Assembly (NCBI GenBank): GCA_002269645.1
Contig: NIVC01003035.1
Coordinates: 1 to 58,426 of the forward strand
Origin: Macrostomum lignano
Taxonomy: Eukaryota
Direction: 5' to 3'
Length of the DNA: 58,426 bases
Shown: positions 18,501 through 52,400 of the stretch, one piece after another
Position numbering within the stretch: the first letter of the stretch is position 1
Layout of the letters: the number at the start of each line of letters is the position of its first letter
Program-made: the position numbers and the translations under genes
The notes under the pieces: model-generated
The model's input: only the letters and a program-made list of their open reading frames with translations
What the model was told of the DNA's origin: nothing
The model's database searches: none

Positions 18501-18687
18501 ATTTTTTAGAGAAACCCAGTTTCCCGTACCTATTCTACTTATAAGTAGTCACTGATGCTTACTCTTTAAATTCGTGGCTTCATATTTGAAAAAATGTTAA
18601 AAATATAAGTGACATTAGTGATAAGGAAAATTTTCAGTTGATTAAAAGCTTTAAAATGTCGGTAAAACCTATTCAAATTTAGTAAAA

Positions 18688-20164
18688 GGGGATGTCAACT
18701 TAAGCACCAGAATGGAGCCCGAAGTTCAGCTCCGGACCAAACCGACTGCAATCGATAACTTGTCGGCCCAGACGACTAGAATCGCCGAGACATCCCATCC
18801 GGCTCCCTTCCTTGGGGTCCCAGGGATAAAGGGGATAAAATGGGGATCTCATGTCAACTTAAGGCCCTGGAATGGAGCCCGAAGTTCAGCTCCGGACCAA
18901 ACCGACTGCAATCGATAACTTGTCGGCCCAGACGACTAGAATCGCCGAGACATCCCATCCGGCTCCCTTCCTTGGGGTCCCAGGGGATAAAGGGGATAAA
19001 ATGGGGATCTCATGTCAACTTAAGGCCCTGGAATGGAGCCCGAAGTTCAGCTCCGGACCAAACCGACTGCAATCGATAACTTGTCGGCCCAGACGACTAG
19101 AATCGCCGAGACATCCCATCCGGCTCCCTTCCTTGGGGTCCCAGGGGATAAAGGGGATAAAATGGGGATCTCATGTCAACTTAAGGCCCTGGAATGGAGC
19201 CCGAAGTTCAGCTCCGGACCAAACCGACTGCAATCGATAACTTGTCGGCCCAGACGACTAGAATCGCCGAGACATCCCATCCGGCTCCCTTCCTTGGGGT
19301 CCCAGGGGATAAAGGGGATAAAATGGGGATCTCATGTCAACTTAAGCACCAGAATGGAGCCCGAAGTTCAGCTCCGGACCAAACCGACTGCAATCGATAA
19401 CTTGTCGGCCCAGACGACTAGAATCGCCGAGACATCCCATCCGGCTCCCTTCCTTGGGGTCCCAGGGGATAAAGGGGATAAAATGGGGATCTCATGTCAA
19501 CTTAAGGCCCTGGAATGGAGCCCGAAGTTCAGCTCCGGACCAAACCGACTGCAATCGATAACTTGTCGGCCCAGACGACTAGAATCGCCGAGACATCCCA
19601 TCCGGCTCCCTTCCTTGGGGTCCCAGGGGATAAAGGGGATAAAATGGGGATCTCATGTCAACTTAAGCACCAGAATGGAGCCCGAAGTTCAGCTCCGGAC
19701 CAAACCGACTGCAATCGATAACTTGTCGGCCCAGACGACTAGAATCGCCGAGACATCCCATCCGACTCCCTTCCTTGGGGTCCCAGGGGATAAAGGGGAT
19801 AAAATGGGGATCTCATGTCAACTTAAGGCTCTGGAATGGAGCCCGAAGTTCAGCTCCGGACCAAACCGACTGCAATCGATAACTTGTCGGCCCAGACGAC
19901 TAGAATCGCCGAGACATCCCATCCGGCTCCCTTCCTTGGGTCCCAGGGGATAAAGGGGATAAAATGGGGATCTCATGTCAACTTAAGGCCCTGGAATGGA
20001 GCCCGAAGTTCAGCTCCGGACCAAACCGACTGCAATCGATAACTTGTCGGCCCAGACGACTAGAATCGCCGAGACATCCCATCCGGTTTCAAGTGACGAA
20101 GCTCTATTCTATTCGAATATCGCATTAGCGGGTGTATTTTATTTTAGCTATTATATATTGTTTG
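18688..20164 (+). repeat. Left TIR: ~9 tandem copies of a 160-161-bp unit (18688-20086) plus ~78 bp unique inner TIR
   Basis: ATGGAGCCCGAAG recurs at 18712, 18872, 19033, 19194, 19354, 19515, 19675, 19836, 19996. Inner segment tttcaagtgacgaagctc...ctattatatattg starts at 20087. Confidence 0.95.
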
Positions 20165-20400
20165 CATTGTAATATTTCCGTCGTTTAATTTTTCCGGATT
20201 TTTGAGAATGTTTTCGCGGTTTTGATTTGACCACTTTAGGCGAGAGATTTTTGATACTGTGCGTCAAGTATTTGTAGCATTAGTTTAAGTGATATATTTT
20301 AAGTGATATATTAATGAAGTTAAGGTTTTGGTCAGTTTTTCTTACTTAGTTTTATGACAGGTGCAGATTTGTTGCAGATTGCGTTTTATACTTGCTAGTA

Positions 20401-23337
20401 ATGTCCGATGTTACTTGCTCTCAATGTGGTCATCAATTCAGCAAAGCAGCCAATTTGAACCGACATCTCGAAACGACTAGATGTGGTCGCTGCTCATCTG
20501 AATCGTCTGGAGCCTTCGCGCCTCCGAGAAACGCACGAGAGGCGCTTCAGTTTCTTGCGGTCGGTGGTAAGTATGTGAAAGTTTTTTTGAACCCAAACCT
20601 TTTTCCACGAACCGCAAATGAGAAGGAGTTCAAACGTATTTGCGGTCTTAGCTATAGTGATTTCGATAGCTTCTCAGAAATGTTACCAGAAGTATCTCGC
20701 CTTCGTATTTTGACAAAGCCATCTCGAATATTTTTGTACCTGAAGAAGCTTCGCCAAGGTTGCAGCTTTCAATCATTAGCTTTCGATTTCAACATTTCTG
20801 CCCAAAGAGCATGCAACATTTTTTGGGAGATTGCCAAGGAGCAGTACCTACGGGATCCATATCAACCGAGGTCGATAGCGTCGACTCCGATTCAGACTCT
20901 GCTTGAGGAAAATGTAGTACGCGATCAATTTATTCTCGGTGTATTTCACACACTACTCAAAGGCAAGAAGCTTGTTCTTCTAGTGGGTGATCATACTTAC
21001 TTTTATCTCCCTAAGAGCAGCTCACACCACACGCAAATTCGAACTTACTTTTCCGGCAAGAAAATGAATGTGAACAAAAAAATGGCGGTTGTCAACAGTA
21101 GAGGAAAAATTATCTACACCGCTCCCCTTACCGCCGCTATCTCGCCAACAATGGGCGATGGGAATTTGACTGCAATGCAAGTTGACATGGAGGCTGAAGG
21201 ACTAATAGAGCCCATTTTGTTGCGCATTCTGTGCTCTGTACAGAAAGATTATCACGTTATTGGCATTTTCGACAAAGGTTACAGCCACCAACTTTGTTCA
21301 CCAACTTCGGTTAACTTCCGCGACTTTATAGAGACTAATAGTAAAGGCTGCACGACGCTTCTATTTCCGACCAGTCCAGGTGACCGAGTTCTAAACGAGC
21401 AGTTTGAATTTGTAAATAATGAGGCTCCTGTTGGTGACCGATCAATACCAGGAAAGCTTACATCAATCGAAGCAAATACAAGTCGCTGCGCTACGCTTTT
21501 CCGTTATCTCGTAGAATGTAGCTTTGCTGCAATCAAGCAGGACAAATGCATAAATGAGCGACAGGAGCCGTACCAATGGCTACATGCCCCAGAGTTTACC
21601 GAACGCAGCCGGCTCGATGTTGTTATTGAAAACTCCATGGCAAAATTCAACCGTTCGCATCCAGGATTTCAAGCTACAAGGAGTCTGCCGCCGTCATGGT
21701 CAGATTGCTCCATGTTCGAATACGGACGGAACTTTGCTAAACGTCTTTTCATTGCGAATGAGCTAGACGAAATTGAGCAACTTGAGTACAATTGCGATTT
21801 GACTCGAATACCAACGAGTTCTACCCGAAAATGGACAGCAGTGGATCCCCTGGACCCTGAAAGTTCAGGGTTCCCCAGCGTTGACGAAAGAAATCTGGAA
21901 GAGCTTAGCATCGGCCCATACCACGTTCTTCAGTCAAAACGCTACATCGAAAACGTCAGAGTTCATGAGGTGCTCAGTAGCTACGCTGGAGACTCGTGGC
22001 GCGATTTCGAATTGTTGATTTCTGAACTGCCAAGCCATTTAAAATGCTGGAAGTTTCATCAGCGAGCGCCACCAAAGGGGTGGAGCAGTAAGTTTGGAGA
22101 ATGGAGGCCATCTTGGATATATTTAGCCGTTCTTCATTCCCGTCATCGGTCAAAAACTTACCGAGTTGTCCTTCGTATTTGCGAAACTGCAAGTGGTAAC
22201 CGATTCGGATTTCGTGACTCGGGGCTGCTGCGTCTGCATGGCTACTTTTCATCCTCAAAGGCCGGAAGCAGGACAGCAGGGTGTGACAGTCATGTTATGG
22301 CTGTGGTTAGAATGCTAGGCTGTTATGCATATCACCCCGAAAGCTACAACATGTGCGGCAGCAGCTTCCGATTTATTGACAGTGCTTTGCCAAAAGCACT
22401 GATTGCCAATCTTTACAATGATCAATCTGGTGGTCATCCAGCTCCAAATGCACCTCGCAGAGACAGTGCTGAATCGCAGCAAGATGAACAGAGGCACAGT
22501 TCAAATGCTACTGGTTCATTGAATTCGCCGAAGAAGTTATTTGGGTTGCCAAATAATGGCCTGCAGTGCTACGCAAATGCAGCAGTGCAATTGTTTCTCT
22601 GCCTGCATTCTAATGGATGCATTTTAAAAGAGACTAGCAACGACCAAGTCCATCGAGAGCTGCTTCGTCTTCTGACGGAGATGCAACAGCGGTCTGCAAC
22701 AGTCACTCCACTGTTAACGGCAGTTCAGTTGCAACATCCAGATTCATTTCAAACAAATCAGCACCATTGCGTCAACGAATTTGTTCAAACGCTTCTAATA
22801 CATCTGGAATTTCTGTCATCAGATGCTTTCACAGAATTTTCACTCATTCAAACTTGTCGGGATTGCCAGCGCACAAGTGCTGAAGTTCCTGTTGGCACAA
22901 TCGATAACAGAGTGATTTGCATTCCTCTCTGTCAATTTGAGCGCTCAATTGTCAGTTTAGACAAAATCTTCTGCGCTTTTGTCGCTCCTCAGGTAGTGAA
23001 ATGTTCGGACGCCAATTGCCTGGGCGATTGTAATCAAGAGATCGTAGTAACACCTGGAAAGTTTACCCTGATATATCTTGATCGTGCTAGTATGGATGGC
23101 CACCTTAAGCTTCAAACTCCTGTAAGCTTTTCTTCAAGGTCAGGGGGTGTTTCTACACTTGGTAAGCCAGTGGCCACAATATCACACCATGGAAACCGAC
23201 TGAAATCGGGACATTTCACAGCAAGCGTACTGAGCTGTGTGTGGACGAGAATTGACGACATGAAAGTTACGTCAGACTATAACCCGTTCGTACGTGAGCC
23301 TGAGTGCATCGTGCTCGTTGCACTTTTAAACTCGTAA
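20401..23337 (+). CDS. Transposase-deubiquitinase fusion (978 aa): C2HC zinc finger, HTH_Tnp_4, DDE_Tnp_4, degenerate SWIM, USP/peptidase C19-like domain
   Basis: Cx2Cx12Hx5C at the N-terminus. IFLYLKKLRQG.SFQSLAFDFNIS HTH. D(20989, VGDHT), D(21271, FDKGY), E(21514, LVECSF). USP Cys box GLPNNGLQCYAN (C at 22567), His box HHG...SGHFTA (H at 23212), WTRIDD (23254). No stop or shift. Confidence 0.88.
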   Translation: MSDVTCSQCGHQFSKAANLNRHLETTRCGRCSSESSGAFAPPRNAREALQFLAVGGKYVKVFLNPNLFPRTANEKEFKRICGLSYSDFDSFSEMLPEVSRLRILTKPSRIFLYLKKLRQGCSFQSLAFDFNISAQRACNIFWEIAKEQYLRDPYQPRSIASTPIQTLLEENVVRDQFILGVFHTLLKGKKLVLLVGDHTYFYLPKSSSHHTQIRTYFSGKKMNVNKKMAVVNSRGKIIYTAPLTAAISPTMGDGNLTAMQVDMEAEGLIEPILLRILCSVQKDYHVIGIFDKGYSHQLCSPTSVNFRDFIETNSKGCTTLLFPTSPGDRVLNEQFEFVNNEAPVGDRSIPGKLTSIEANTSRCATLFRYLVECSFAAIKQDKCINERQEPYQWLHAPEFTERSRLDVVIENSMAKFNRSHPGFQATRSLPPSWSDCSMFEYGRNFAKRLFIANELDEIEQLEYNCDLTRIPTSSTRKWTAVDPLDPESSGFPSVDERNLEELSIGPYHVLQSKRYIENVRVHEVLSSYAGDSWRDFELLISELPSHLKCWKFHQRAPPKGWSSKFGEWRPSWIYLAVLHSRHRSKTYRVVLRICETASGNRFGFRDSGLLRLHGYFSSSKAGSRTAGCDSHVMAVVRMLGCYAYHPESYNMCGSSFRFIDSALPKALIANLYNDQSGGHPAPNAPRRDSAESQQDEQRHSSNATGSLNSPKKLFGLPNNGLQCYANAAVQLFLCLHSNGCILKETSNDQVHRELLRLLTEMQQRSATVTPLLTAVQLQHPDSFQTNQHHCVNEFVQTLLIHLEFLSSDAFTEFSLIQTCRDCQRTSAEVPVGTIDNRVICIPLCQFERSIVSLDKIFCAFVAPQVVKCSDANCLGDCNQEIVVTPGKFTLIYLDRASMDGHLKLQTPVSFSSRSGGVSTLGKPVATISHHGNRLKSGHFTASVLSCVWTRIDDMKVTSDYNPFVREPECIVLVALLNS

Positions 23338-23943
23338 AAGCATTTTTAGCGAAAATACAATTGTTTTAAGCGAGTGTACTGTACGTTTTGTATTGCAGAT
23401 TTTAAAGGACATGCAGATTAAGAAACAATGTCATCTCACGCATTCTTTACGTACCATAGGTTACATGTGAAGATAATTCAGACTGACATCAAATAACAAA
23501 AGCTTTGAATTAGTTGTTTCAATTTCTTTTAGACTCACAATTAACTAAAAATTGGAAGTATTTTTTACTGAAGCAAAGAACTTAAACCCAAAAACCTTTT
23601 CTTAGGACTGAGAAACTTTTGCAATTATGATTTTACTAAGCTTTGCGTGAGAGGCGTTACTTTATTTGCTTAAAAACGTGTGCTGCTTTGCATGACATGC
23701 TTTGTTTTTATTACTTTGATAACTTGTACAGCTTTGCATGATATGCTTTGTATCCATTACGTCATAACTTGTACAGCCTTGCGTGATATTCTTTATTTTA
23801 CCAATATACATGGTTTCGGTTTATCGTCAAAAGTTCTGCTTACTAATAACCAAACGAATTTACAAGTTAATTTTTTCAAACTGAGTTTCCAGATCAGCAT
23901 TTTTAACAGGTTTCGATACGAGCAAATCATTTTTATTACTTAA

Positions 23944-26389
23944 CAATCAATGTATAATAGCTGAAATAAAATACACCCGCTAATGCGATATTCGAATTGA
24001 ATAGAGCTTCGTCACTTGAAACCGGATGGGATGTCTCGGCGATTCTAGTCGTCTGGGCCGACAAGTTATCGATTGCAGTCGGTTTGGTCCGGAGCTGAAC
24101 TTCGGGCTCCATTCCAGAGCCTTAAGTTGACACGAGATCCCCATTTTATCCCCTTTATCCCCTGGGACCCCAAGGAAGGGAGCCGGATGGGATGTCTCGG
24201 CGATTCTAGTCGTCTGGGCCGACAACTTATCGATTGCAGTCGGTTTGGTCCGGAGCTGAACTTCGGGCTCCATTCCAGAGCCTTAAGTTGACATGAGATC
24301 CCCATTTTATCCCCTTTATCCCCTGGGACCCCAAGGAAGGGAGTCGGATGGGATGTCTCGGCGATTCTAGTCGTCTGGGCCGACAAGTTATCGATTGCAG
24401 TCGGTTTGGTCCGGAGCTGAACTTCGGGCTCCATTCCAGAGCCTTAAGTTGACATGAGATCCCCATTTTATCCCCTTTATCCCCTGGGACCCCAAGGAAG
24501 GGAGCCGGATGGGATGTCTCGGCGATTCTAGTCGTCTGGGCCGACAAGTTATCGATTGCAGTCGGTTTGGTCCGGAGCTGAACTTCGGGCTCCATTCCAG
24601 AGCCTTAAGTTGACACGAGATCCCCATTTTATCCCCTTTATCCCCTGGGACCCCCAGGAAGGGAGCCGGATGGGATGTCTCGGCGATTCTAGTCGTCTGG
24701 GCCGACAAGTTATCGATTGCAGTCGGTTTGGTCCGGAGCTGAACTTCGGGCTCCATTCCAGAGCCTTAAGTTGACATGAGATCCCCATTTTATCCCCTTT
24801 ATCCCCTGGGACCCCAAGGAAGGGAGCCGGATGGGATGTCTCGGCGATTCTAGTCGTCTGGGCCGACAAGTTATCGATTGCAGTCGGTTTGGTCCGGAGC
24901 TGAACTTCGGGCTCCATTCCAGAGCCTTAAGTTGACACGAGATCCCCATTTTATCCCCTTTATCCCCTGGGACCCCCAGGAAGGGAGCCGGATGGGATGT
25001 CTCGGCGATTCTAGTCGTCTGGGCCGACAAGTTATCGATTGCAGTCGGTTTGGTCCGGAGCTGAACTTCGGGCTCCATTCCAGAGCCTTAAGTTGACATG
25101 AGATCCCCATTTTATCCCCTTTATCCCCTGGGACCCCAAGGAAGGGAGCCGGATGGGATGTCTCGGCGATTCTAGTCGTCTGGGCCGACAAGTTATCGAT
25201 TGCAGTCGGTTTGGTCCGGAGCTGAACTTCGGGCTCCATTCCAGAGCCTTAAGTTGACACGAGATCCCCATTTTATCCCCTTTATCCCCTGGGACCCCCA
25301 GGAAGGGAGCCGGATGGGATGTCTCGGCGATTCTAGTCGTCTGGGCCGACAAGTTATCGATTGCAGTCGGTTTGGTCCGGAGCTGAACTTCGGGCTCCAT
25401 TCCAGAGCCTTAAGTTGACATGAGATCCCCATTTTATCCCCTTTATCCCCTGGGACCCCAAGGAAGGGAGCCGGATGGGATGTCTCGGCGATTCTAGTCG
25501 TCTGGGCCGACAAGTTATCGATTGCAGTCGGTTTGGTCCGGAGCTGAACTTCGGGCTCCATTCCAGAGCCTTAAGTTGACACGAGATCCCCATTTTATCC
25601 CCTTTATCCCCTGGGACCCCAAGGAAGGGAGCCGGATGGGATGTCTCGGCGATTCTAGTCGTCTGGGCCGACAAGTTATCGATTGCAGTCGGTTTGGTCC
25701 GGAGCTGAACTTCGGGCTCCATTCCAGAGCCTTAAGTTGACATGAGATCCCCATTTTATCCCCTTTATCCCCTGGGACCCCAAGGAAGGGAGCCGGATGG
25801 GATGTCTCGGCGATTCTAGTCGTCTGGGCCGACAAGTTATCGATTGCAGTCGGTTTGGTCCGGAGCTGAACTTCGGGCTCCATTCCAGAGCCTTAAGTTG
25901 ACACGAGATCCCCATTTTATCCCCTTTATCCCCTGGGACCCCAAGGAAGGGAGCCGGATGGGATGTCTCGGCGATTCTAGTCGTCTGGGCCGACAAGTTA
26001 TCGATTGCAGTCGGTTTGGTCCGGAGCTGAACTTCGGGCTCCATTCTGGTGCTTAAGTTGACATGAGATCCCCATTTTATCCCCTTTATCCCCTGGGACC
26101 CCAAGGAAGGGAGCCGGATGGGATGTCTCGGCGATTCTAGTCGTCTGGGCCGACAAGTTATCGATTGCAGTCGGTTTGGTCCGGAGCTGAACTTCGGGCT
26201 CCATTCCAGAGCCTTAAGTTGACACGAGATCCCCATTTTATCCCCTTTATCCCCTGGGACCCCAAGGAAGGGAGCCGGATGGGATGTCTCGGCGATTCTA
26301 GTCGTCTGGGCCGACAAGTTATCGATTGCAGTCGGTTTGGTCCGGAGCTGAACTTCGGGCTCCATTCTGGTTCTTAAGTTGACATCCCC
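23944..26389 (-). repeat. Right TIR: ~78 bp unique inner TIR plus ~15 inverted copies of the 161-bp unit (24022-26389)
   Basis: Reverse complement of the left TIR. Repeat-derived ORFs recur every 161 nt from 24273 to 26365. Inner segment matches the left one with about 4 mismatches. Confidence 0.95.
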
Positions 26390-26977
26390 TTTCTAGGGGA
26401 TTCGTTAATAACAATTTTTTAACAAATACCACACGTTCAAATCAAAACATGTGGGTAATTTCTTGTAATAGTAAACAAAGTATTTGAATAAAATAAAAAA
26501 CTGTGATTCAAAAACAGAATATGATCATTCATCACAAGGCCGGAAAATCTCTTTATCAGTTAGACAGTGTAGAGATCAAACGATAAGTTATTTACATGCA
26601 TACTAGAAATAATGTATACAAATACTTAGATTTACATACAAGTACATGCGATTTCAAAAATAGCTCGTAGTTCAGTTTAGGGCTCCAGAATAAAATAACC
26701 AAAGAATAACAAAAACCTACAGCTAACATTTTTGAAATGATTAACTTGAATTTATATGATAGCATCTATCGATAAGGCTGACTTACAGAACGAACAGCCA
26801 GACAATAACTTTTCAGACATGAATGCTACGAAGAGGACCGAAACAATAGCAACTGTTCATAATTGAACAGGAGATTCAAAACTAGACAAAAAGTCGCATA
26901 GTCATCCTTTTTGTTGTAGTATCTTGTCGGCTTTATTTGCAAATCGTTCTCGAACTAATTGTGCTCAGTGGCGAATT

Positions 26978-33181: not shown

Positions 33182-41686
<8,505 letters not shown>

Positions 41687-46582: not shown

Positions 46583-48066
46583 ATGCAAGTCGCCAGTAAA
46601 GAGGCCGCTGTGAGATGCGCCGAAGAGCTGCTCATGTCGCTGCACAATCCGTCAACGAGGGACTCGGCTCTGGCTGAGCTGAGCAAGCATCGCGACGCCA
46701 TACCGGAATTGGCTTGTCTGATCTGGCAGTCCTTTGGCTGCGTTGCCATTCTGTTAGAAGAGATCGTGTCCGCGTATCAGCATCTCAGCACTGGGGCATT
46801 GTCGGTAAGTTTGTGTTGCCTTGATTCTTGATCTACCGATATGCATCGAAAACTTGTCGGTCAGTGTGTGTTTTTATGTTGCTTTGGTTCATGATCTACC
46901 GATATGTATCGAAAAAAAATTGGTGAGTGTGTGTTCTTGTGTTGCTTTGGTTTATGATCTACCGATATGTATCGAAAACTTGTCGGTGAGTGTGTGTTTT
47001 TATGTTGCTTTGGTTCATGATCTACCGATATGTATCGAAAACTTGTCGGGGAGTGTGTTTTTCTGTTGCTTTGGTTCGTGAATTACCGATATGTATCGAA
47101 AAATTGTCGATGAGTGTGTTTTTGTGTTGCTTTGGTTCATGATCTACCGATATGTATCGAAAAAATTGTCGGTGAGTGTGTGTTTTTTGTGTTGCTTTAT
47201 TTCTTGATATACCGATATGTATCGAAAAAACGTAATTAATTTAACAATTTGGTAAATTTGTACTAATGTAGTAGATGCATTTACAGTGTTTGAAACTAGT
47301 TTTATTGATACACTCACTTAGATTAGGTTAGTTTAGTTAAAGTTCGCGAAGAGCAATTAGTCTGCTGCACTCTTGTTTTATAGAAGCAACGCTGCTTAAC
47401 CGTCTCAAAGCATTTAGTTTGATGAAGCGTCTTTGCGCCTGTCACTCGATCACCGATAAAAGTGCATTCACAGCTGTGTCTCTTTAACCCCCTCCCTCCC
47501 GCATGCCTGAGCGGCCTCCTTGCCTATGGAGCCGACTAGCGGAGCAGTGAGGCCTTCTCTAATTAAAGCTAAGGGTTTGCTGTTTGGGTTGTGATGCACA
47601 AATCCTGCCCAGTTGGAGATTGTGCCGGCGTGTGGATATGACTGGTTATTGGGGACTGAGCTGCTCCACTGCGTCTCATTTCTTCTTGATTAACGCTTGT
47701 GTCAGTCCGGCATCTGTGTGCCTGCTTCTCTGCCTGTCTGTCTGCCTGTCTGTCTGTCTGTCTGTCTGTGTGCCTGCTTCTCTGCCTGTCTGTCTGCCTG
47801 TCTGTCTGTCTGTCTGTCTGTGTGCCTGCTTCTCTGCCTGTCTGTCTGCCTGTCTGTCTGTCTGTCTGTCTGTGTGCCTGCTTCTCTGCCTGTCTGTCTG
47901 CCTGTCTGTCTGTCTGTCTGTCTGTGTGCCTGCTTCTCTGCCTGTCTGTCTGCCTGTCTGTCTGTCTGTCTGTCTGTGTGCCTGCTTCTCTGCCTGTCTG
48001 TCTGCCTGTCTGTCTGTCTGTCTGTCTGTGTGCCTGCTTCTCTGCCTGTCTGCGTCTGTCTGTTCA

Positions 48067-48103
<37 letters not shown>

Positions 48104-48140
48104 GTGCCTGCTTCTCTGCCTGTCTGCGTCTGTCTGTTCA

Positions 48141-48203
<63 letters not shown>

Positions 48204-48314
48204 GTCTGTCTGTCTGTCTATCTGTCTGTTCATCTGTCTGTCTGTCTGTCTGCCTGTCTGTCTGTCTGTCTGTCTGTGTGCCTGCTTCTCTGCCTGTCTG
48301 CGTCTGTCTGTTCA

Positions 48315-48371
<57 letters not shown>

Positions 48372-48374
48372 TCA

Positions 48375-48423
<49 letters not shown>

Positions 48424-48460
48424 GTCTATCTGTCTGTCTGTCTGTCTATCTGTCTGTTCA

Positions 48461-48521
<61 letters not shown>

Positions 48522-48566
48522 GTCTATCTGTCTGTCTGTCTGTCTATCTGTCTATCTGTCTGTTCA

Positions 48567-48635
<69 letters not shown>

Positions 48636-48672
48636 GTCTATCTGTCTGTCTGTCTGTCTATCTGTCTGTTCA

Positions 48673-48741
<69 letters not shown>

Positions 48742-48778
48742 GTCTATCTGTCTGTCTGTCTGTCTATCTGTCTGTTCA

Positions 48779-48843
<65 letters not shown>

Positions 48844-48880
48844 GTCTATCTGTCTGTCTGTCTGTCTATCTGTCTGTTCA

Positions 48881-48945
<65 letters not shown>

Positions 48946-48982
48946 GTCTATCTGTCTGTCTGTCTGTCTATCTGTCTGTTCA

Positions 48983-49059
<77 letters not shown>

Positions 49060-49114
49060 ATATCTATCTATCTGTCTATCTCTATCTATCTATCTATCTA
49101 TCTATCTGTCTATC

Positions 49115-49161
<47 letters not shown>

Positions 49162-49328
49162 GTCTATCTCTATCTATCTATCTGTCTATCTGTCTATCTA
49201 TCTATCTGTCTATCTCTATCTATCTATCTGTCTATCTATCTATCTGTCTATCTTTATCTATCTATCTGTCTATCTATCTATCTATCTATCTGTCTATCTA
49301 TCTATATATCTATCTGTCTATCTATCTG

Positions 49329-49367
<39 letters not shown>

Positions 49368-49416
49368 GTCTATCTATCTATATATCTATCTGTCTATCTA
49401 TCTGTCTATCTATCTG

Positions 49417-49455
<39 letters not shown>

Positions 49456-52400
49456 GTCTATCTATCTATATATCTATCTGTCTATCTATCTGTCTATCTA
49501 TCTATTTCCCTAATCTAAGTTGTTGTATTTTAGCACACCAAAGTGCTTTAAGTACTTCTATAGTTCGTATGGGCCATCTCTAATTGCCCATGCACTTTAA
49601 GCACTCTTTTCACCTCTTTTTGATCGCTTCTTTGTTAAGTTCGTTTTAGATGTATTAATAAAGGTAACTTCGCTCAGTTAATTGCTTTCCCTGCTCAGTC
49701 CAGGGGCCGAAATTTTTTAGCACGAAATTGCGTTACCGTCATGACCCTGGTCATCTGGTTCAGAGCTTCAAAGGTCTTCGTTTTCCTTGACTATCCTCAT
49801 GCACAGTCATTTTCCTTTGTGAGACTCGTTTTTATCGTCCTTGAGTATCTAAATTTTTTGGATAGTTTCCCAATCATCAGTGTTTTATTATCCTCGAGTT
49901 CTCCCAGTAATGAATTATCACTAGTTATGAATTGAATTATGCCTAGTCATGAATTATCCCTACTTATGAATTATCCCTAGTCATGAATTATCCCTACTTA
50001 TGAATTATCCCTACTTATGAATTATCCCTACTTATGAATTATCCCTACTTATGAATTATCCCTACTTATGAATCATCCCTAGTCATGAATTATCCCTACT
50101 TGTGAATTATCCCTACTTATAAATTATCCCTACTTATGAATTATCCCTACTTATGAATTATCCCTACTTATGAATTATCCCTACTATGAATTATCCCTAA
50201 TATGAATTATCCCACTTATGAATTATCCCTACTATGAATTATCCCACTTATGAATTATCCCTACTTATGAATTATCCCTACTCATGAATTATCCCTACTA
50301 TGAATTATCCCACTTATGAATTATCCCTACCTATGAATTATCCCTACTTATGAATTATCCCTACTTATGAATTATCCCTACTTATGAATTATCCCTAACA
50401 TAAATTATCCCACTTATGAATTATCCCACTTATGAATTATCCCACTTATGAATTATCCCTACTTATGAATTATCCCTACTATGAATTATCCCTACTTATG
50501 AATTATCCCTACTATGAATTTTCCCTAACATGAATTATCCCTACCTATGAATTATCCCTACTTATGAATTATCCCTACTTATGAATTATCCCTACTATGA
50601 ATTATCCCTAACATGAATTATCCCACTTATGAATTATCCCTACTTATGAATTATCCCTACTATGAATTATCCCTACTATGAATTATCCCTACCTATGAAT
50701 TATCCCTCACTTATGAATTATCCCTACTTATGAATTATCCCTACTATGAATTATCCCTAATATGAATTATCCCACTTATGAATTATCCCTACTATGAATT
50801 ATCCCACTTATGAATTATCCCTACTTATGAATTATCCCACTTATGAATTATCCCACTTATGAATTATCCCACTTATGAATTATCCCTACTTATGAATTAT
50901 CCCTACTTATGAATTATCCCTACTATGAATTATCTACACTTCTGAACTACCCCATATTTCTTACTGCTTATATTATTCTAATTTTTCCAACACACATGGC
51001 AGTGTTGTCTTTAATTTATTTTCCCAATCCTGATTCCCGCTCCCCTTCCCACCTGTGACAGGTGCAGCTATCAAATCGGGTATGCAACGCCATGGCCCTG
51101 CTGCAGTGTCTGGCTGCACACCCAGCCACTAGGCGGGCTGTGTTGGACCTGCAGCTGGTGCACTACCTGTTCCCGTTCCTAAGCAACCATCCTCAGCATC
51201 AGCCGGCAGATCCTCGCCCAGCTGAGTTCCTTCGCCTCACAGCTTTGGGTGTTATTGGCGCTTTGGCGAAGTCCGAAGATCCTCAGGCTGTTGAATGCCT
51301 TCTACGAACCGAACAGCTGGTGCCGCTGTGCCTTCGCGTGATGGACTTTGGCAGCGAGCTGAGCCGCACTGTGGCCACCTTTGTGGTGCAGAAGGTGCTG
51401 CAGGATCCCGCTGGGCTGGCCTACGTGTGCAACACCTATCAAAGGTTTGAGCAGGTGGCCGCAGGTCTGGCTGGCGTTCTGGTGTACTTGCGAGTGAACC
51501 CGAGCGCCCGACTATTGAAGCACGTTGTTCGATGCTATGTGCTGCTGACTGATAACTTCAGGTAGGGGTTCACTCGTTTTTATTAGTCGCTTGTATTACT
51601 CAGTTAAACCATTGGCTTTTAAATCCATGGGACTTAAAATGTATGTGAAAATTGGCCTTCAAATTCTTAGGGAAAATCGGCATTTCAGTTCTTAGGGATA
51701 ATCGGCCTTCAAATGCTTAACGAAACATCGGCATTCGAATTCTTAAGGAAAATCGGCCTTCAAGTTCTTAAAGAAAATCGGCCTTCAAATTCTTAAGGAA
51801 AATCGGCCTTCAAATTCCTAAGGAAAATCGGCCTTTAAATTCCTAAGGAAAATCGGCCTTCAAATTCCTAAGGAAAATCGGCCTTCAAATTTTTAAGGAA
51901 AATCGGCCTTCAAATTCCTAGGGAAAATCGGACTTCAAATTCTTAGGGAAAATCGGACTTCAAATTCTTAAGGAAAATCGGCCTTCAAATTGTTGGGGAA
52001 ATCGGCCTTCAAATTGTTGAGAAAATAGGCCTTCAAATTGTTAGGGAAAATCGGCCTTCAAATTGTTGGGAAATCGGCCTTCGAATTGTTGAGAAAATAG
52101 GCCTTCAAATTCTTAAGGAAAATCGGCCTTCAAATTCTTATGGAAAATCGGCCTTCAAATTCTTAGGAAAATCGGCCTTCAAATTCTTAAGGAAAATCGG
52201 CCTTCAAATTGTTGGGAAGATTGGCCTTCAAATTGTTGGGAAAATCGGCCTTCGAATTGTTGGGAAAATCGGCCTTCAAATTGTTGGGAAAATCGGCCTT
52301 CAAATTGTTAAGAAAATCGGCCTTCAAATTCTTAAGGAAAATCGGCCTTCAAATTCTTAAGGAAAATCGGCCTTCAAATTCTTAAGGAAAATCGGCCTTC

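What the first reader, a model, noticed from the sequence alone, without database searches (positions are those of the whole stretch)
20401..23337. Transposase fused to a USP-type deubiquitinase domain with an intact catalytic triad
Seen: one uninterrupted ORF joining ZnF, HTH and DDE (D20989, D21271, E21514) to a C-terminal domain with a Cys box (GLPNNGLQCYANAAVQ), a QHHCVNEF box (canonical QQDAxEF, Asp replaced), CxxC pairs (CRDC, CSDANC), a His box (HHGNRLKSGHFTA) and WTRIDD. Known: these motifs define peptidase C19/USP enzymes. Transposon-borne proteases I know of are mostly Ulp1/SUMO (C48) or OTU, so a C19 fused to a PIF/ISL2EU transposase is unusual. Inference: the transposase may carry its own deubiquitinase to escape proteasomal turnover or to remove H2A/H2B ubiquitin at donor or target chromatin.
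Basis: partly seen in the sequence, partly recalled or inferred. Interest (0 to 1): 0.9.

Follow-up and report, generated by a model that had tools for sequence, protein, structure and literature searches.

The report
Transposon whose transposase carries a deubiquitinase
An intact 7.7-kb cut-and-paste DNA transposon in an animal genome encodes a transposase fused to a USP-type ubiquitin protease; the same fusion recurs in at least eight or nine distant relatives, so the protease looks like a working part of this little-described transposon lineage, although transposase-protease fusions of this general kind have been noted before.

Summary
Window 20401-23337 (+) is one uninterrupted 978-codon ORF.

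The C-terminal 267 residues are a genuine USP/C19 domain:
- Pfam UCH scores 37.3 bits (cut-off 23.9).
- A profile built only from transposon-borne copies hits USP2 at E 2e-18.
- The AlphaFold model (pLDDT 87.7) matches USP18, USP2 and USP46 at E ~1e-17.
- The catalytic Cys723, oxyanion Asn718, His938 and Asp952/953 are present.

The N-terminal 660 residues are a PHIS-superfamily DDE transposase of the ISL2EU/Spy branch (hhalign probability 100%, E 1.9e-49). It is not a canonical PIF.

The gene sits in a complete element, 18688-26389. Its inverted repeats are 1.5 and 2.4 kb long and built of 161-bp tandem units. It lies between AAAA and TTT with no target-site duplication, as Spy elements do.

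The fusion is no accident. At least eight or nine lineages under 50% identical carry it, mostly from marine metagenomes, and all keep the catalytic residues.

It is not wholly unprecedented. Bao et al. 2010 mention a Trichomonas IS4/IS5-type transposase fused to peptidase C19. HELIANO 2024 reports UCH domains in Helitron-like elements.

What the protease acts on remains inferred. Verdict: a new variant of a known kind, of moderate interest.

The parts
18684..18687 (+). Left host flank AAAA, the AAA half of a Spy-type AAA|TTT target
   Evidence: Sequence read...AATTTAGTAAAA|GGGGATGTCAAC. Similarity between the two ends begins at AAAGGGG.
18688..26389 (+). The whole transposon, 7702 bp
   Evidence: Limits of the inverted-repeat similarity. 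The outermost 100 bp of the two ends are 99/100 identical.
18688..20164 (+). Left terminal inverted repeat, 1477 bp: a terminal GGGGATGTCAACTTAAG, then 8.7 copies of a 161-bp unit (18692-20086), then 78 bp of unique inner sequence
   Evidence: TRF (97% matches). Inverted repeats. Inner extension 20087-20164 matches 24021-23944 at 95%.
20401..23337 (+). The single ORF, 978 aa: the transposase-USP fusion
   Evidence: tblastn finds only this copy in the window.
20416..20484 (+). N-terminal C2HC zinc finger (aa 6-28)
   Evidence: zf-C2H2 is weak (E 0.01). The same C-x2-C-x12-H-x5-C pattern occurs in P0001 and in ORF1 of the P0010 family.
20710..20826 (+). HTH_Tnp_4-like helix-turn-helix (aa 104-142)
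   Evidence: Pfam E 3.7e-5, 23.7 bits, below the gathering score of 27. It aligns to the HTH of canonical DDE_Tnp_4 transposases in hhalign. The model is helical with pLDDT >90.
20968..21540 (+). DDE (RNase H-like) catalytic core with D197, D253, D291, R368 and E372
   Evidence: Family alignment. hhalign maps GDHTY to DGTYIY, FDKGY to VDRGF and RYLVE to RxVVE. In the model D197 lies on a strand, D291 just after a strand and E372 in a helix.
22240..22296 (+). Degenerate SWIM-like finger (aa 614-632, GYFSSSKAGSRTAGCDSHV). The family consensus is C..C..G.R..GCC.HV, and the first two Cys are lost here.
   Evidence: Alignments. The sister family L001 shares the same loss.
22420..22533 (+). Disordered linker (aa 674-711)
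   Evidence: pLDDT below 50 in the full-length model.
22534..23334 (+). USP/C19 cysteine protease domain (aa 712-978): Asn718, Cys723, Zn-ribbon Cys819/822/868/873, His938, Asp952/953
23944..26389 (-). Right terminal inverted repeat, 2446 bp, with 14.6 copies of the 161-bp unit (24022-26367)
26390..26392 (+). Right host flank TTT, the TTT half of the AAA|TTT target. No target-site duplication.
   Evidence...GTTGACATCCCC|TTTCTAGGGG.

Best explanation
Window 18688-26389 is a structurally intact cut-and-paste DNA transposon with a single ORF. It belongs to the PHIS superfamily (ISL2EU/Spy branch) and lies in an animal genome.

Its ends are long 'foldback-like' inverted repeats made of 161-bp tandem units. 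Each unit carries a near-copy of the terminal sequence GGGGAT(CTCAT)GTCAACTTAAGG. It sits between AAAA and TTT without a target-site duplication, which is how Spy elements insert.

Its one protein has these parts in order: a C2HC finger, an HTH, a DDE RNase-H-like core (D197/D291/E372), a large conserved C-terminal transposase region ending in a degenerate SWIM-like finger, a ~40-residue disordered linker, and a compact USP/C19 protease domain with all catalytic residues.

Shown:
- the anatomy of the element;
- the homology of both halves of the protein;
- the recurrence of the fusion in at least eight or nine lineages under 50% identical, with the catalytic Cys, His and Asp conserved.

Inferred:
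- The USP domain is an active isopeptidase carried to the transposon ends by the transposase. It acts in cis.
- Most probably it strips ubiquitin (or a ubiquitin-like modifier) from the transposase or transpososome itself. That would protect it from ubiquitin-dependent removal.
- Alternatively, or in addition, it acts on chromatin and repair factors at the excision and integration site.
- This would be the same selective logic as the Ulp1 and OTU proteases carried by Mutator, CACTA, Zisupton, Ginger1 and Helitron elements.

The confidence of 0.7 is for the whole statement. The identity and anatomy alone would be about 0.9, 'an active protease that serves the transposon' about 0.6, and any particular substrate below 0.4.
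For: ORF and motifs.

USP identity:
- Pfam UCH is above its gathering score.
- A profile of transposon-borne domains only hits USP2 at E 2e-18.
- The model has pLDDT 87.7 and pTM 0.84.
- Foldseek finds USP18, USP2, USP46 and USP21 at E ~1e-17, TM ~0.7.

Catalytic residues: Cys, His and Asp are invariant across six transposon-borne USP domains that share only 18-35% identity.

Transposase identity:
- hhalign of the family against canonical DDE_Tnp_4 transposases gives probability 100%, E 1.9e-49, over 461 columns from the HTH to the SWIM-like finger.
- Relatives P0006 and P0008 pass the DDE_Tnp_4 gathering score.
- The full-length model is confident over aa 60-660.

Element structure.

Spy-type target: AAAA|...|TTT, chance about 7e-4 given the local base composition. 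The Spy definition is in PMC4122938.

Recurrence of the fusion:
- P0010, P0021 and P0033 and P0047.
- Census: 8 of 134 representatives have both halves, plus the fragment P0007.
- The 51%-identical sister family (L001 + P0007) is also a fusion.
- P0033 and P0010 have many near-identical full-length copies in different samples, and the catalytic residues are invariant within these families.
Against: - No activity data exist. The target of the protease is pure inference.
- The QQD box, which by my recollection of USP-ubiquitin structures contacts the Arg-rich ubiquitin tail, is QHH here. It is degenerate in several transposon-borne copies.
- The USP domain evolves faster than the transposase core. 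Against the sister family it is 34% identical, versus 51% for the transposase. Within the P0010 family 12.3% of USP sites vary, versus 8.0% of transposase sites. That is about as much as the linker at 13.6%.
- Several close relatives (P0003-6, P0012) lack the domain altogether. It is therefore dispensable for transposition in the family.
- Only one copy is visible in this window. No empty site is available, so AAA/TTT could be the last bases of the inverted repeat rather than host DNA.
- The SWIM-like finger has lost two Cys ligands in this sub-lineage.
Confidence: 0.7

Rival explanations
1. The USP domain is not a deubiquitinase in the strict sense. Either it is a pseudo-enzyme used as a ubiquitin-binding or recruitment module, or it is a protease re-targeted to another ubiquitin-like modifier such as ISG15, NEDD8 or a SUMO-like protein.
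For: The QQD box is degenerate in this sub-lineage: QHHC in the window, QQHC in P0007 and RQNC in P0014. The top structural match is the ISG15-specific USP18, although ubiquitin-specific USP2 and USP46 score practically the same. Constraint is weaker than on the transposase core.
Against: The catalytic Cys, oxyanion Asn, His and Asp are all kept across lineages with only 18-35% identity. A mere binding module would not need them. The four Zn-ribbon Cys are also kept.
Confidence: 0.15
2. The locus is no longer a mobile element but a host gene domesticated from such a transposon, that is, a transposase-derived DNA-binding deubiquitinase.
For: Only one copy is present in the 58-kb window. The SWIM-like finger has lost two Cys. 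No exact copy of the protein is on record elsewhere.
Against: The gene is still framed by 1.5- and 2.4-kb inverted repeats that are 97-99% identical, with 99/100 identity in the outermost 100 bp. Such repeats would decay around a domesticated gene. The DDE triad and the R(3)E motif are intact. The Cys loss is shared with a 51%-identical sister family and so is old and tolerated. Relatives occur as many near-identical copies.
Confidence: 0.08
3. The fusion is a one-off accident of this copy with no function, caused by capture or read-through into a host USP gene fragment.
For: DNA transposons do capture host fragments. Some family members lack the domain.
Against: The same order of domains, with a linker and a complete USP fold, is found in at least eight or nine lineages under 50% identical, from different samples. 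The catalytic residues are conserved and the reading frames are intact in dozens of copies.
Confidence: 0.02

Closest known systems
Spy transposons (PHIS superfamily; Han et al. 2014, PMC4122938; active cgSpy, PMC11304231)
   Same: Single long ORF. N-terminal HTH plus a DDE_Tnp_4-type core. Insertion between AAA and TTT with no target-site duplication in this copy. Very long inverted repeats are possible (up to 1474 bp in Spy). The host is an invertebrate-type animal. The canonical relatives used for hhalign have exactly the Spy D(79)D(47)E spacing and the same C-terminal C.CK.GARTVGCCSH finger.
   Different: D-D-E spacing is 93/80, against the published 79-80/44-62. The terminal sequence is GGGGATGT, not GGANNNNG. 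There is an N-terminal C2HC finger. The inverted repeats are built of tandem subrepeats, whereas Han et al. state that long Spy TIRs have none. There is a C-terminal USP domain, and neither PHIS paper searched, nor the text hits in the cgSpy paper, mention a protease.
ISL2EU transposons
   Same: Sister group of Spy within PHIS. The transposase has a zinc finger, HTH and DDE. The TIR starts with GG.
   Different: ISL2EU makes an AT duplication at A|AT|T, has a THAP finger and carries a second ORF with a YqaJ exonuclease (PMC4482050). None of these is present here.
Trichomonas vaginalis XP_001314237.1 (transposase_11 + peptidase C19), mentioned in Bao, Kapitonov and Jurka 2010 (PMC2836005), citing Gladyshev and Arkhipova 2009
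   Same: An IS4/IS5-clan DDE transposase fused to a C19/USP domain. This is the only earlier mention I found of a DDE-transposase/C19 architecture.
   Different: It is a one-sentence remark on a protist protein with a pfam01609-type core. No element structure, family or conservation was described. I could not retrieve the sequence or the cited paper, so its relationship to this family is unknown.
Transposon-borne Ulp1 (C48) and OTU proteases (Mutator/KI-MULE, CACTA, Zisupton, Ginger1, Helentrons) and UCH domains in Helitron-like HLE2 elements (HELIANO, PMC11417382)
   Same: A ubiquitin or UBL deconjugating cysteine protease appended to, or encoded beside, the transposition enzyme and stably inherited with the element. 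The function in transposition is unknown in every case.
   Different: The protease fold differs (USP rather than Ulp1 or OTU), or the transposition enzyme differs (DDE cut-and-paste rather than rolling-circle RepHel).
Foldback-type elements (Drosophila FB, Galileo); from my own knowledge
   Same: Very long terminal inverted repeats composed of tandem subrepeats, with unequal copy number in the two arms.
   Different: Those belong to other superfamilies (MULE-like FB, and P for Galileo). The resemblance is in architecture only.
RAG1 (Transib-derived recombinase with a RING E3 ligase domain); from my own knowledge
   Same: A DDE transposase-type enzyme physically coupled to an enzyme of the ubiquitin system.
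   Different: The activity is the opposite (ligase, not protease). It belongs to an unrelated transposase superfamily and is domesticated.

Membership tests
Peptidase C19 / USP | Cys box with the catalytic Cys and the oxyanion-hole Asn five residues upstream | tested here: met
   GLPN718NGLQC723YANAAVQ. It aligns to the G-L-x-N-x-G-N-x-C-Y consensus of relatives and to solved USP15/USP2.
Peptidase C19 / USP | His box (GHY-type catalytic His) and the downstream Asp/Asn of the triad | tested here: met
   SGH938FTA and WTRID952D953. His and Asp are invariant in the six-sequence transposon-only alignment.
Peptidase C19 / USP | Pfam PF00443 above its gathering score | tested here: met
   37.3 bits against 23.9, covering aa 715-958 and profile positions 2-237 of 254.
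Peptidase C19 / USP | USP fold (fingers-palm-thumb) | tested here: met
   Model pLDDT 87.7, pTM 0.84. Of the 550 Foldseek matches, all 50 listed are USP catalytic domains; 335 have E <= 0.001. The best is E 3.3e-17, with TM ~0.65-0.72.
Peptidase C19 / USP | QQDAxEF box | tested here: not met
   QHHCVNEF in the window. The Asp is kept in P0021 (HDAGEF) and P0033 (EDAQEV) but lost in the window sub-lineage and in P0010. It is not a catalytic residue.
Peptidase C19 / USP | Isopeptidase activity on ubiquitin conjugates | not testable with these tools
   This needs a biochemical assay.
PHIS superfamily (PIF/Harbinger-ISL2EU-Spy; DDE_Tnp_4 clan) | Homologous DDE core with the conserved D, K, D, D, R(3)E residues | tested here: met
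   hhalign probability 100%, E 1.9e-49 against proteins that score 37-79 bits on DDE_Tnp_4. D197, K220, D253, D291 and R368-x3-E372 are conserved. Pfam DDE_Tnp_4 itself does not hit the window protein but does hit relatives P0006 and P0008.
PHIS superfamily (PIF/Harbinger-ISL2EU-Spy; DDE_Tnp_4 clan) | Published spacing D(19-29)K(29)D(18-40)D(11-19)P(18-28)R(3)E | tested here: not met
   D(22)K and D(37)D fit. K-D is 32 rather than 29, and the stretch from the second D to E is 80 residues, owing to insertions (definition).
PHIS superfamily (PIF/Harbinger-ISL2EU-Spy; DDE_Tnp_4 clan) | Terminal inverted repeats | tested here: met
Spy group | Insertion between AAA and TTT without a target-site duplication | tested here: inconclusive
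   The flanks are AAAA| and |TTT, and no duplication of 2-3 bp fits. With one copy and no empty site, AAA/TTT cannot be told apart from the last bases of the repeat.
Spy group | D(79-80)D(44-62)E | tested here: not met
   D(93)D(80)E.
Spy group | Terminal 5'-GGANNNNG-3' | tested here: not met
   The end reads GGGGATGTCA. GGATGTCA appears two bases in.
Spy group | Single ORF, HTH at the N-terminus, no second gene | tested here: met
   Only 236 bp and 606 bp of non-coding DNA lie between the ORF and the repeats.
ISL2EU group | AT duplication at A|AT|T, a THAP finger, and a YqaJ second ORF | tested here: not met
   There is no AT duplication, no THAP hit and no second ORF.
PIF/Harbinger group | 3-bp TWA duplication and a Myb/SANT second ORF | tested here: not met

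The most novel reading that the evidence does not exclude
This element and its relatives form an undescribed clade of the ISL2EU/Spy branch of PHIS transposons. The relatives come mostly from marine-plankton metagenomes, with fragments in the flatworm Macrostomum. The clade would be defined by a C2HC finger, D(93)D(80)E-type spacing and a C-terminal USP domain that was ancestral to the clade and later lost in some branches. The USP would be an active, transposase-tethered deubiquitinase that counteracts a ubiquitin-based host response at the transposition site. That would give USP proteases a role alongside Ulp1 and OTU as a third fold independently recruited by transposons against the same host pathway.
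Probability: 0.4. Interest if true: 0.7.

Novelty: new variant of a known kind. Interest (0 to 1): 0.55.

Why it matters
At least five transposon superfamilies have independently picked up ubiquitin or SUMO deconjugating proteases: Ulp1, OTU and now USP. Nobody knows why. It hints at a general ubiquitin- or SUMO-based host control of transposition or of its DNA damage.

This element offers a compact, intronless, apparently intact test case. It is one protein with a clean linker between transposase and protease, and its catalytic Cys can be mutated. Its ends and its Spy-like insertion without a duplication are well defined.

An active Spy transposase already works in human cells (PMC11304231). 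The effect of a tethered deubiquitinase on excision, integration and transposase stability is therefore directly testable. Such a fusion might also interest people who engineer transposases.

The census also shows that this lineage is common in marine eukaryotic metagenomes. I found no description of it in the papers I could search.

Tried and rejected
- Word-indexed protein searches returned almost nothing. The single protein gave only P0001 and the family profile gave three hits. The exhaustive phmmer search was what revealed the family.
- Both metagenome DNA scans found no relative.
- The exact protein is not on record in the contig index.
- I tried to confirm Spy-type ends in relatives. 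Contigs of the P0033 family (L002-L005), the P0010 family (L006, L008, L009) and P0021 (L007) show no end-to-end inverted repeats. The left boundary of the P0033 family could only be placed roughly. Not resolved.
- A sequence profile of the whole family finds no solved transposase, only USPs. Foldseek with the full-length model gives USPs and then a weak Tn5 match (E 0.18). That fits the IS4/IS5 clan but is not evidence on its own.
- I looked for Spy reference protein sequences in the cgSpy supplement, and none are printed. A direct Spy/ISL2EU phylogeny was therefore not possible. I used the published spacing rules instead.
- Gladyshev and Arkhipova 2009 is not held.
- I considered 2-bp (TA, AT) and 3-bp (TAG, TWA, CWG) duplications at the ends. 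None fits without making the two repeat ends unequal.
- I considered using the identical proteins on four 99.5%-identical contigs as evidence of purifying selection. I rejected this because the look-up is by exact protein identity, which is an ascertainment bias.
- Host identification from the MCM7 exon gave only 'an animal', with 86-87% identity to many taxa.


Full report
**1.

Window 20401-23337 (+) is a single ORF of 978 codons.
- D197 in GDHTY, D291 in FDKGY and E372 in RYLVE.
- The Cys box at aa 715-730, with Cys723 at nt 22567.
- QHHCVNEF at aa 787-794.
- CRDC at aa 819 and CSDANC at aa 868.
- The His box at aa 929-941.
- WTRIDD at aa 948-953.

**2. The C-terminal domain is a real USP.**

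- Pfam UCH (PF00443) scores 37.3 bits against a gathering score of 23.9, over aa 715-958.
- A profile made only from the six transposon-borne domains, with no cellular USPs in it, finds solved USP2 at E 2e-18. It also finds about a hundred other USP chains.
- An AlphaFold model of aa 684-978 has mean pLDDT 87.7 and pTM 0.84.
- All 50 listed Foldseek matches in the PDB are USP catalytic domains. They include USP18, USP2, USP46, USP21 and USP30, at E ~1e-17 and TM ~0.7.
- The oxyanion Asn718, Cys723, His938 and Asp952/953 are in place, as are the four zinc-ribbon cysteines.
- The one departure is the QQD box. It is QHH here and variable among the transposon-borne copies.

**3. The N-terminal two thirds is a PHIS transposase, but not a textbook one.**

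Pfam gives only a sub-threshold HTH_Tnp_4 hit (E 3.7e-5) and no DDE_Tnp_4 hit.

The exhaustive search of 1.84 billion representatives found 133 relatives. P0006 and P0008 pass DDE_Tnp_4. The weaker hits are canonical DDE_Tnp_4 plus HTH_Tnp_4 transposases.

A profile-profile comparison of the family (A2) with those canonical proteins (A7) gives probability 100% and E 1.9e-49 over 461 columns. The match runs from the HTH through the DDE core to a shared C-terminal finger, C.CK.GARTVGCCSH. It maps D197, D291 and E372 onto their catalytic residues.

In the full-length model (pLDDT 79; aa 60-660 mostly above 85):
- D197 lies on a strand, D291 just after a strand and E372 in a helix, as expected for an RNase-H-like fold.
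- aa 674-711 are disordered.
- The USP domain follows as a separate body.

The canonical comparison group has D(79)D(47)E, which is the published Spy signature. The window protein has D(93)D(80)E.

**4. The gene lies in a complete element.**

- The ORF is flanked by inverted arrays of a 161-bp tandem repeat. The left array has 8.7 copies at 18692-20086. The right has 14.6 copies at 24022-26367. They are 97-99% complementary.
- The inverted repeat continues 78 bp further inward on each side.
- Outward it ends at GGGGATGTCAACTTAAG on both sides, with 99/100 identity over the outermost 100 bp.
- The element is therefore 18688-26389, 7702 bp.
- Each internal unit contains a near-copy of the terminal sequence (GGGGATCTCATGTCAACTTAAGG). 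The arrays may therefore offer some 23 transposase-binding sites. That is inference.
- The flanks read AAAA| and |TTTC. No 2- or 3-bp duplication fits. The chance of AAA|TTT from local composition is about 7e-4.

This is the defining behaviour of Spy elements, and those have TIRs up to 1474 bp (Han et al. 2014, PMC4122938). With a single copy and no empty site, I cannot exclude that AAA/TTT belong to the repeat.

Han et al. state that long Spy TIRs show no subrepeats, so this foldback-like build is a difference. There is no second ORF, no THAP, no Myb and no YqaJ. ISL2EU and PIF/Harbinger membership therefore fails (PMC4482050).

**5. The fusion is old and recurrent.**

- Pfam finds UCH at the C-terminus of P0010 (1048 aa), P0021 (955 aa, collinear with the window protein end to end at 25% identity), P0033 (1119 aa) and P0047 (1639 aa).
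- A local census with family HMMs finds both halves in 8 of 134 representatives. Each representative stands for a cluster at 50% identity.
- The closest family is also a fusion. Contig L001 (P0001, 51% identical in the transposase) continues after a stop and a frameshift into sequence identical to the start of P0007. P0007 is the tail of a transposase followed by a USP domain that is 34% identical to the window's.
- P0033 and P0010 occur as many near-identical full-length copies in different samples, including Tara Oceans. The catalytic residues are invariant within those families.
- Fragments 55-57% identical occur in gene models of the flatworm Macrostomum lignano.
- A rough neighbour-joining tree without bootstrap puts all the USP-bearing lineages in the two clades nearest the window. 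USP-less members (P0003-6, P0012) are nested among them. The canonical clade has no USP at all. This suggests one early gain followed by losses, but it does not prove it.

**6. Caveats on function.**

- The USP part evolves faster than the transposase part. Against the sister family it is 34% identical, versus 51% for the transposase. Within the P0010 family, variable sites are 12.3% in the USP, 8.0% in the transposase and 13.6% in the linker.
- Some relatives do without it.
- This sub-lineage has also lost the first two cysteines of the SWIM-like finger. The sister family shares that loss, so it is old and tolerated rather than decay of this copy.

What the protease acts on cannot be computed. 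I commit to a tethered isopeptidase acting in cis. Its substrate would be the transposase or transpososome, or ubiquitinated chromatin and repair factors at the break. This is by analogy with the unexplained Ulp1 and OTU domains of other transposons, and I mark it as inference.

**7. Prior knowledge.**

- Neither PHIS paper (PMC4122938, PMC4482050) mentions ubiquitin or a protease, and the text hits in the cgSpy paper (PMC11304231) do not describe one.
[quoted passage not shown] They cite a T. vaginalis protein with transposase_11 plus peptidase C19, and they propose that the ubiquitin pathway is involved in transposition (PMC2836005).
- HELIANO 2024 lists UCH among the domains stably carried by Helitron-like HLE2 elements (PMC11417382).

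The idea and one example of the architecture therefore exist. The family, its element structure, its Spy-like insertion and the conservation of the fusion appear not to have been described in what I could search. Repbase itself was not available to me.

**8. Host and surroundings.**

The window is eukaryotic and from an animal. An MCM7 exon at 38935-39390 is 86-87% identical to MCM7 of many animals. The region is full of minisatellites and also holds a degraded protein-primed polymerase B element at 5.5-9 kb.

**Verdict.**

This is a new variant of a known kind: a Spy/ISL2EU-branch DNA transposon with a conserved USP fusion and foldback-like ends. Interest is 0.55.

Noticed in passing
window 5539-8980 (-): Three adjacent ORFs on the minus strand. 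One has a DNA_pol_B_2 hit (6093-7157, E 5.9e-10). The 591-aa ORF upstream of it has a weak Endonuclease_7 hit. This looks like a degraded Polinton/Maverick-like or other protein-primed polymerase B element.
   Followed up: no
window 38935-39390 (+): An exon of MCM7 (MCM P-loop domain, E 3e-68), 86-87% identical to MCM7 of diverse animals. It shows the window is from an animal genome, but it does not identify the species.
   Followed up: partly
window 36000-58426: Dense run of unrelated minisatellites with periods of 17-125 bp, plus a (TCTG)n array of about 450 copies at 47729-49503. The long ORFs there (47584-49583) are artefacts of the repeat.
   Followed up: no
window 18840-20042 (+) and 23980-26365 (-): The 161-bp TIR subrepeat has no stop codon in one frame. 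This produces spurious repeated ORFs of 68-306 aa (MEPEVQLRTKP...). They are not genes.
   Followed up: yes
window 22240-22296 (aa 614-632); L001 ~2700-2760: The C-terminal SWIM-like finger, conserved across the family and in canonical relatives as C..C..G.R..GCC.HV, has lost its first two Cys in the window (GYFSSSKAGSRTAGCDSHV). The sister family has the same loss (NYSSSKAGSRTAGCDCHV). It is unknown whether zinc is still bound.
   Followed up: partly
L008 202-1944, L009 115-1893, L002 1568-2932: In the P0010 and P0033 families the C2H2/C2HC fingers sit on a separate upstream ORF (580-592 aa and 454 aa). That ORF lies 64 to about 430 nt before the transposase-USP ORF. In P0003-5 the fingers form an N-terminal extension. 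In the window the finger is fused directly. This may be an intron or a genuine two-gene layout.
   Followed up: partly
P0017 (634 aa, metagenome protein): The USP part (aa 40-213) precedes the transposase part (aa 308-606), the reverse of the order in all other fusions. It could be two adjacent copies read as one gene.
   Followed up: no
P0011 and P0018 (Macrostomum lignano; P0011 by accession batch only): Fragments 55-57% identical to aa ~344-471 of the window protein are embedded in flatworm gene models. One is a 2393-aa chimera with THAP and PRP4 domains. One is named as a DUF3480 domain-containing protein. These are probably transposon remnants annotated as host genes.
   Followed up: no
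window 3239-4072 (+): A 277-aa ORF with a sub-threshold F5/8 type C (discoidin) domain hit (E 8e-6). It is possibly an exon of a host gene.
   Followed up: no
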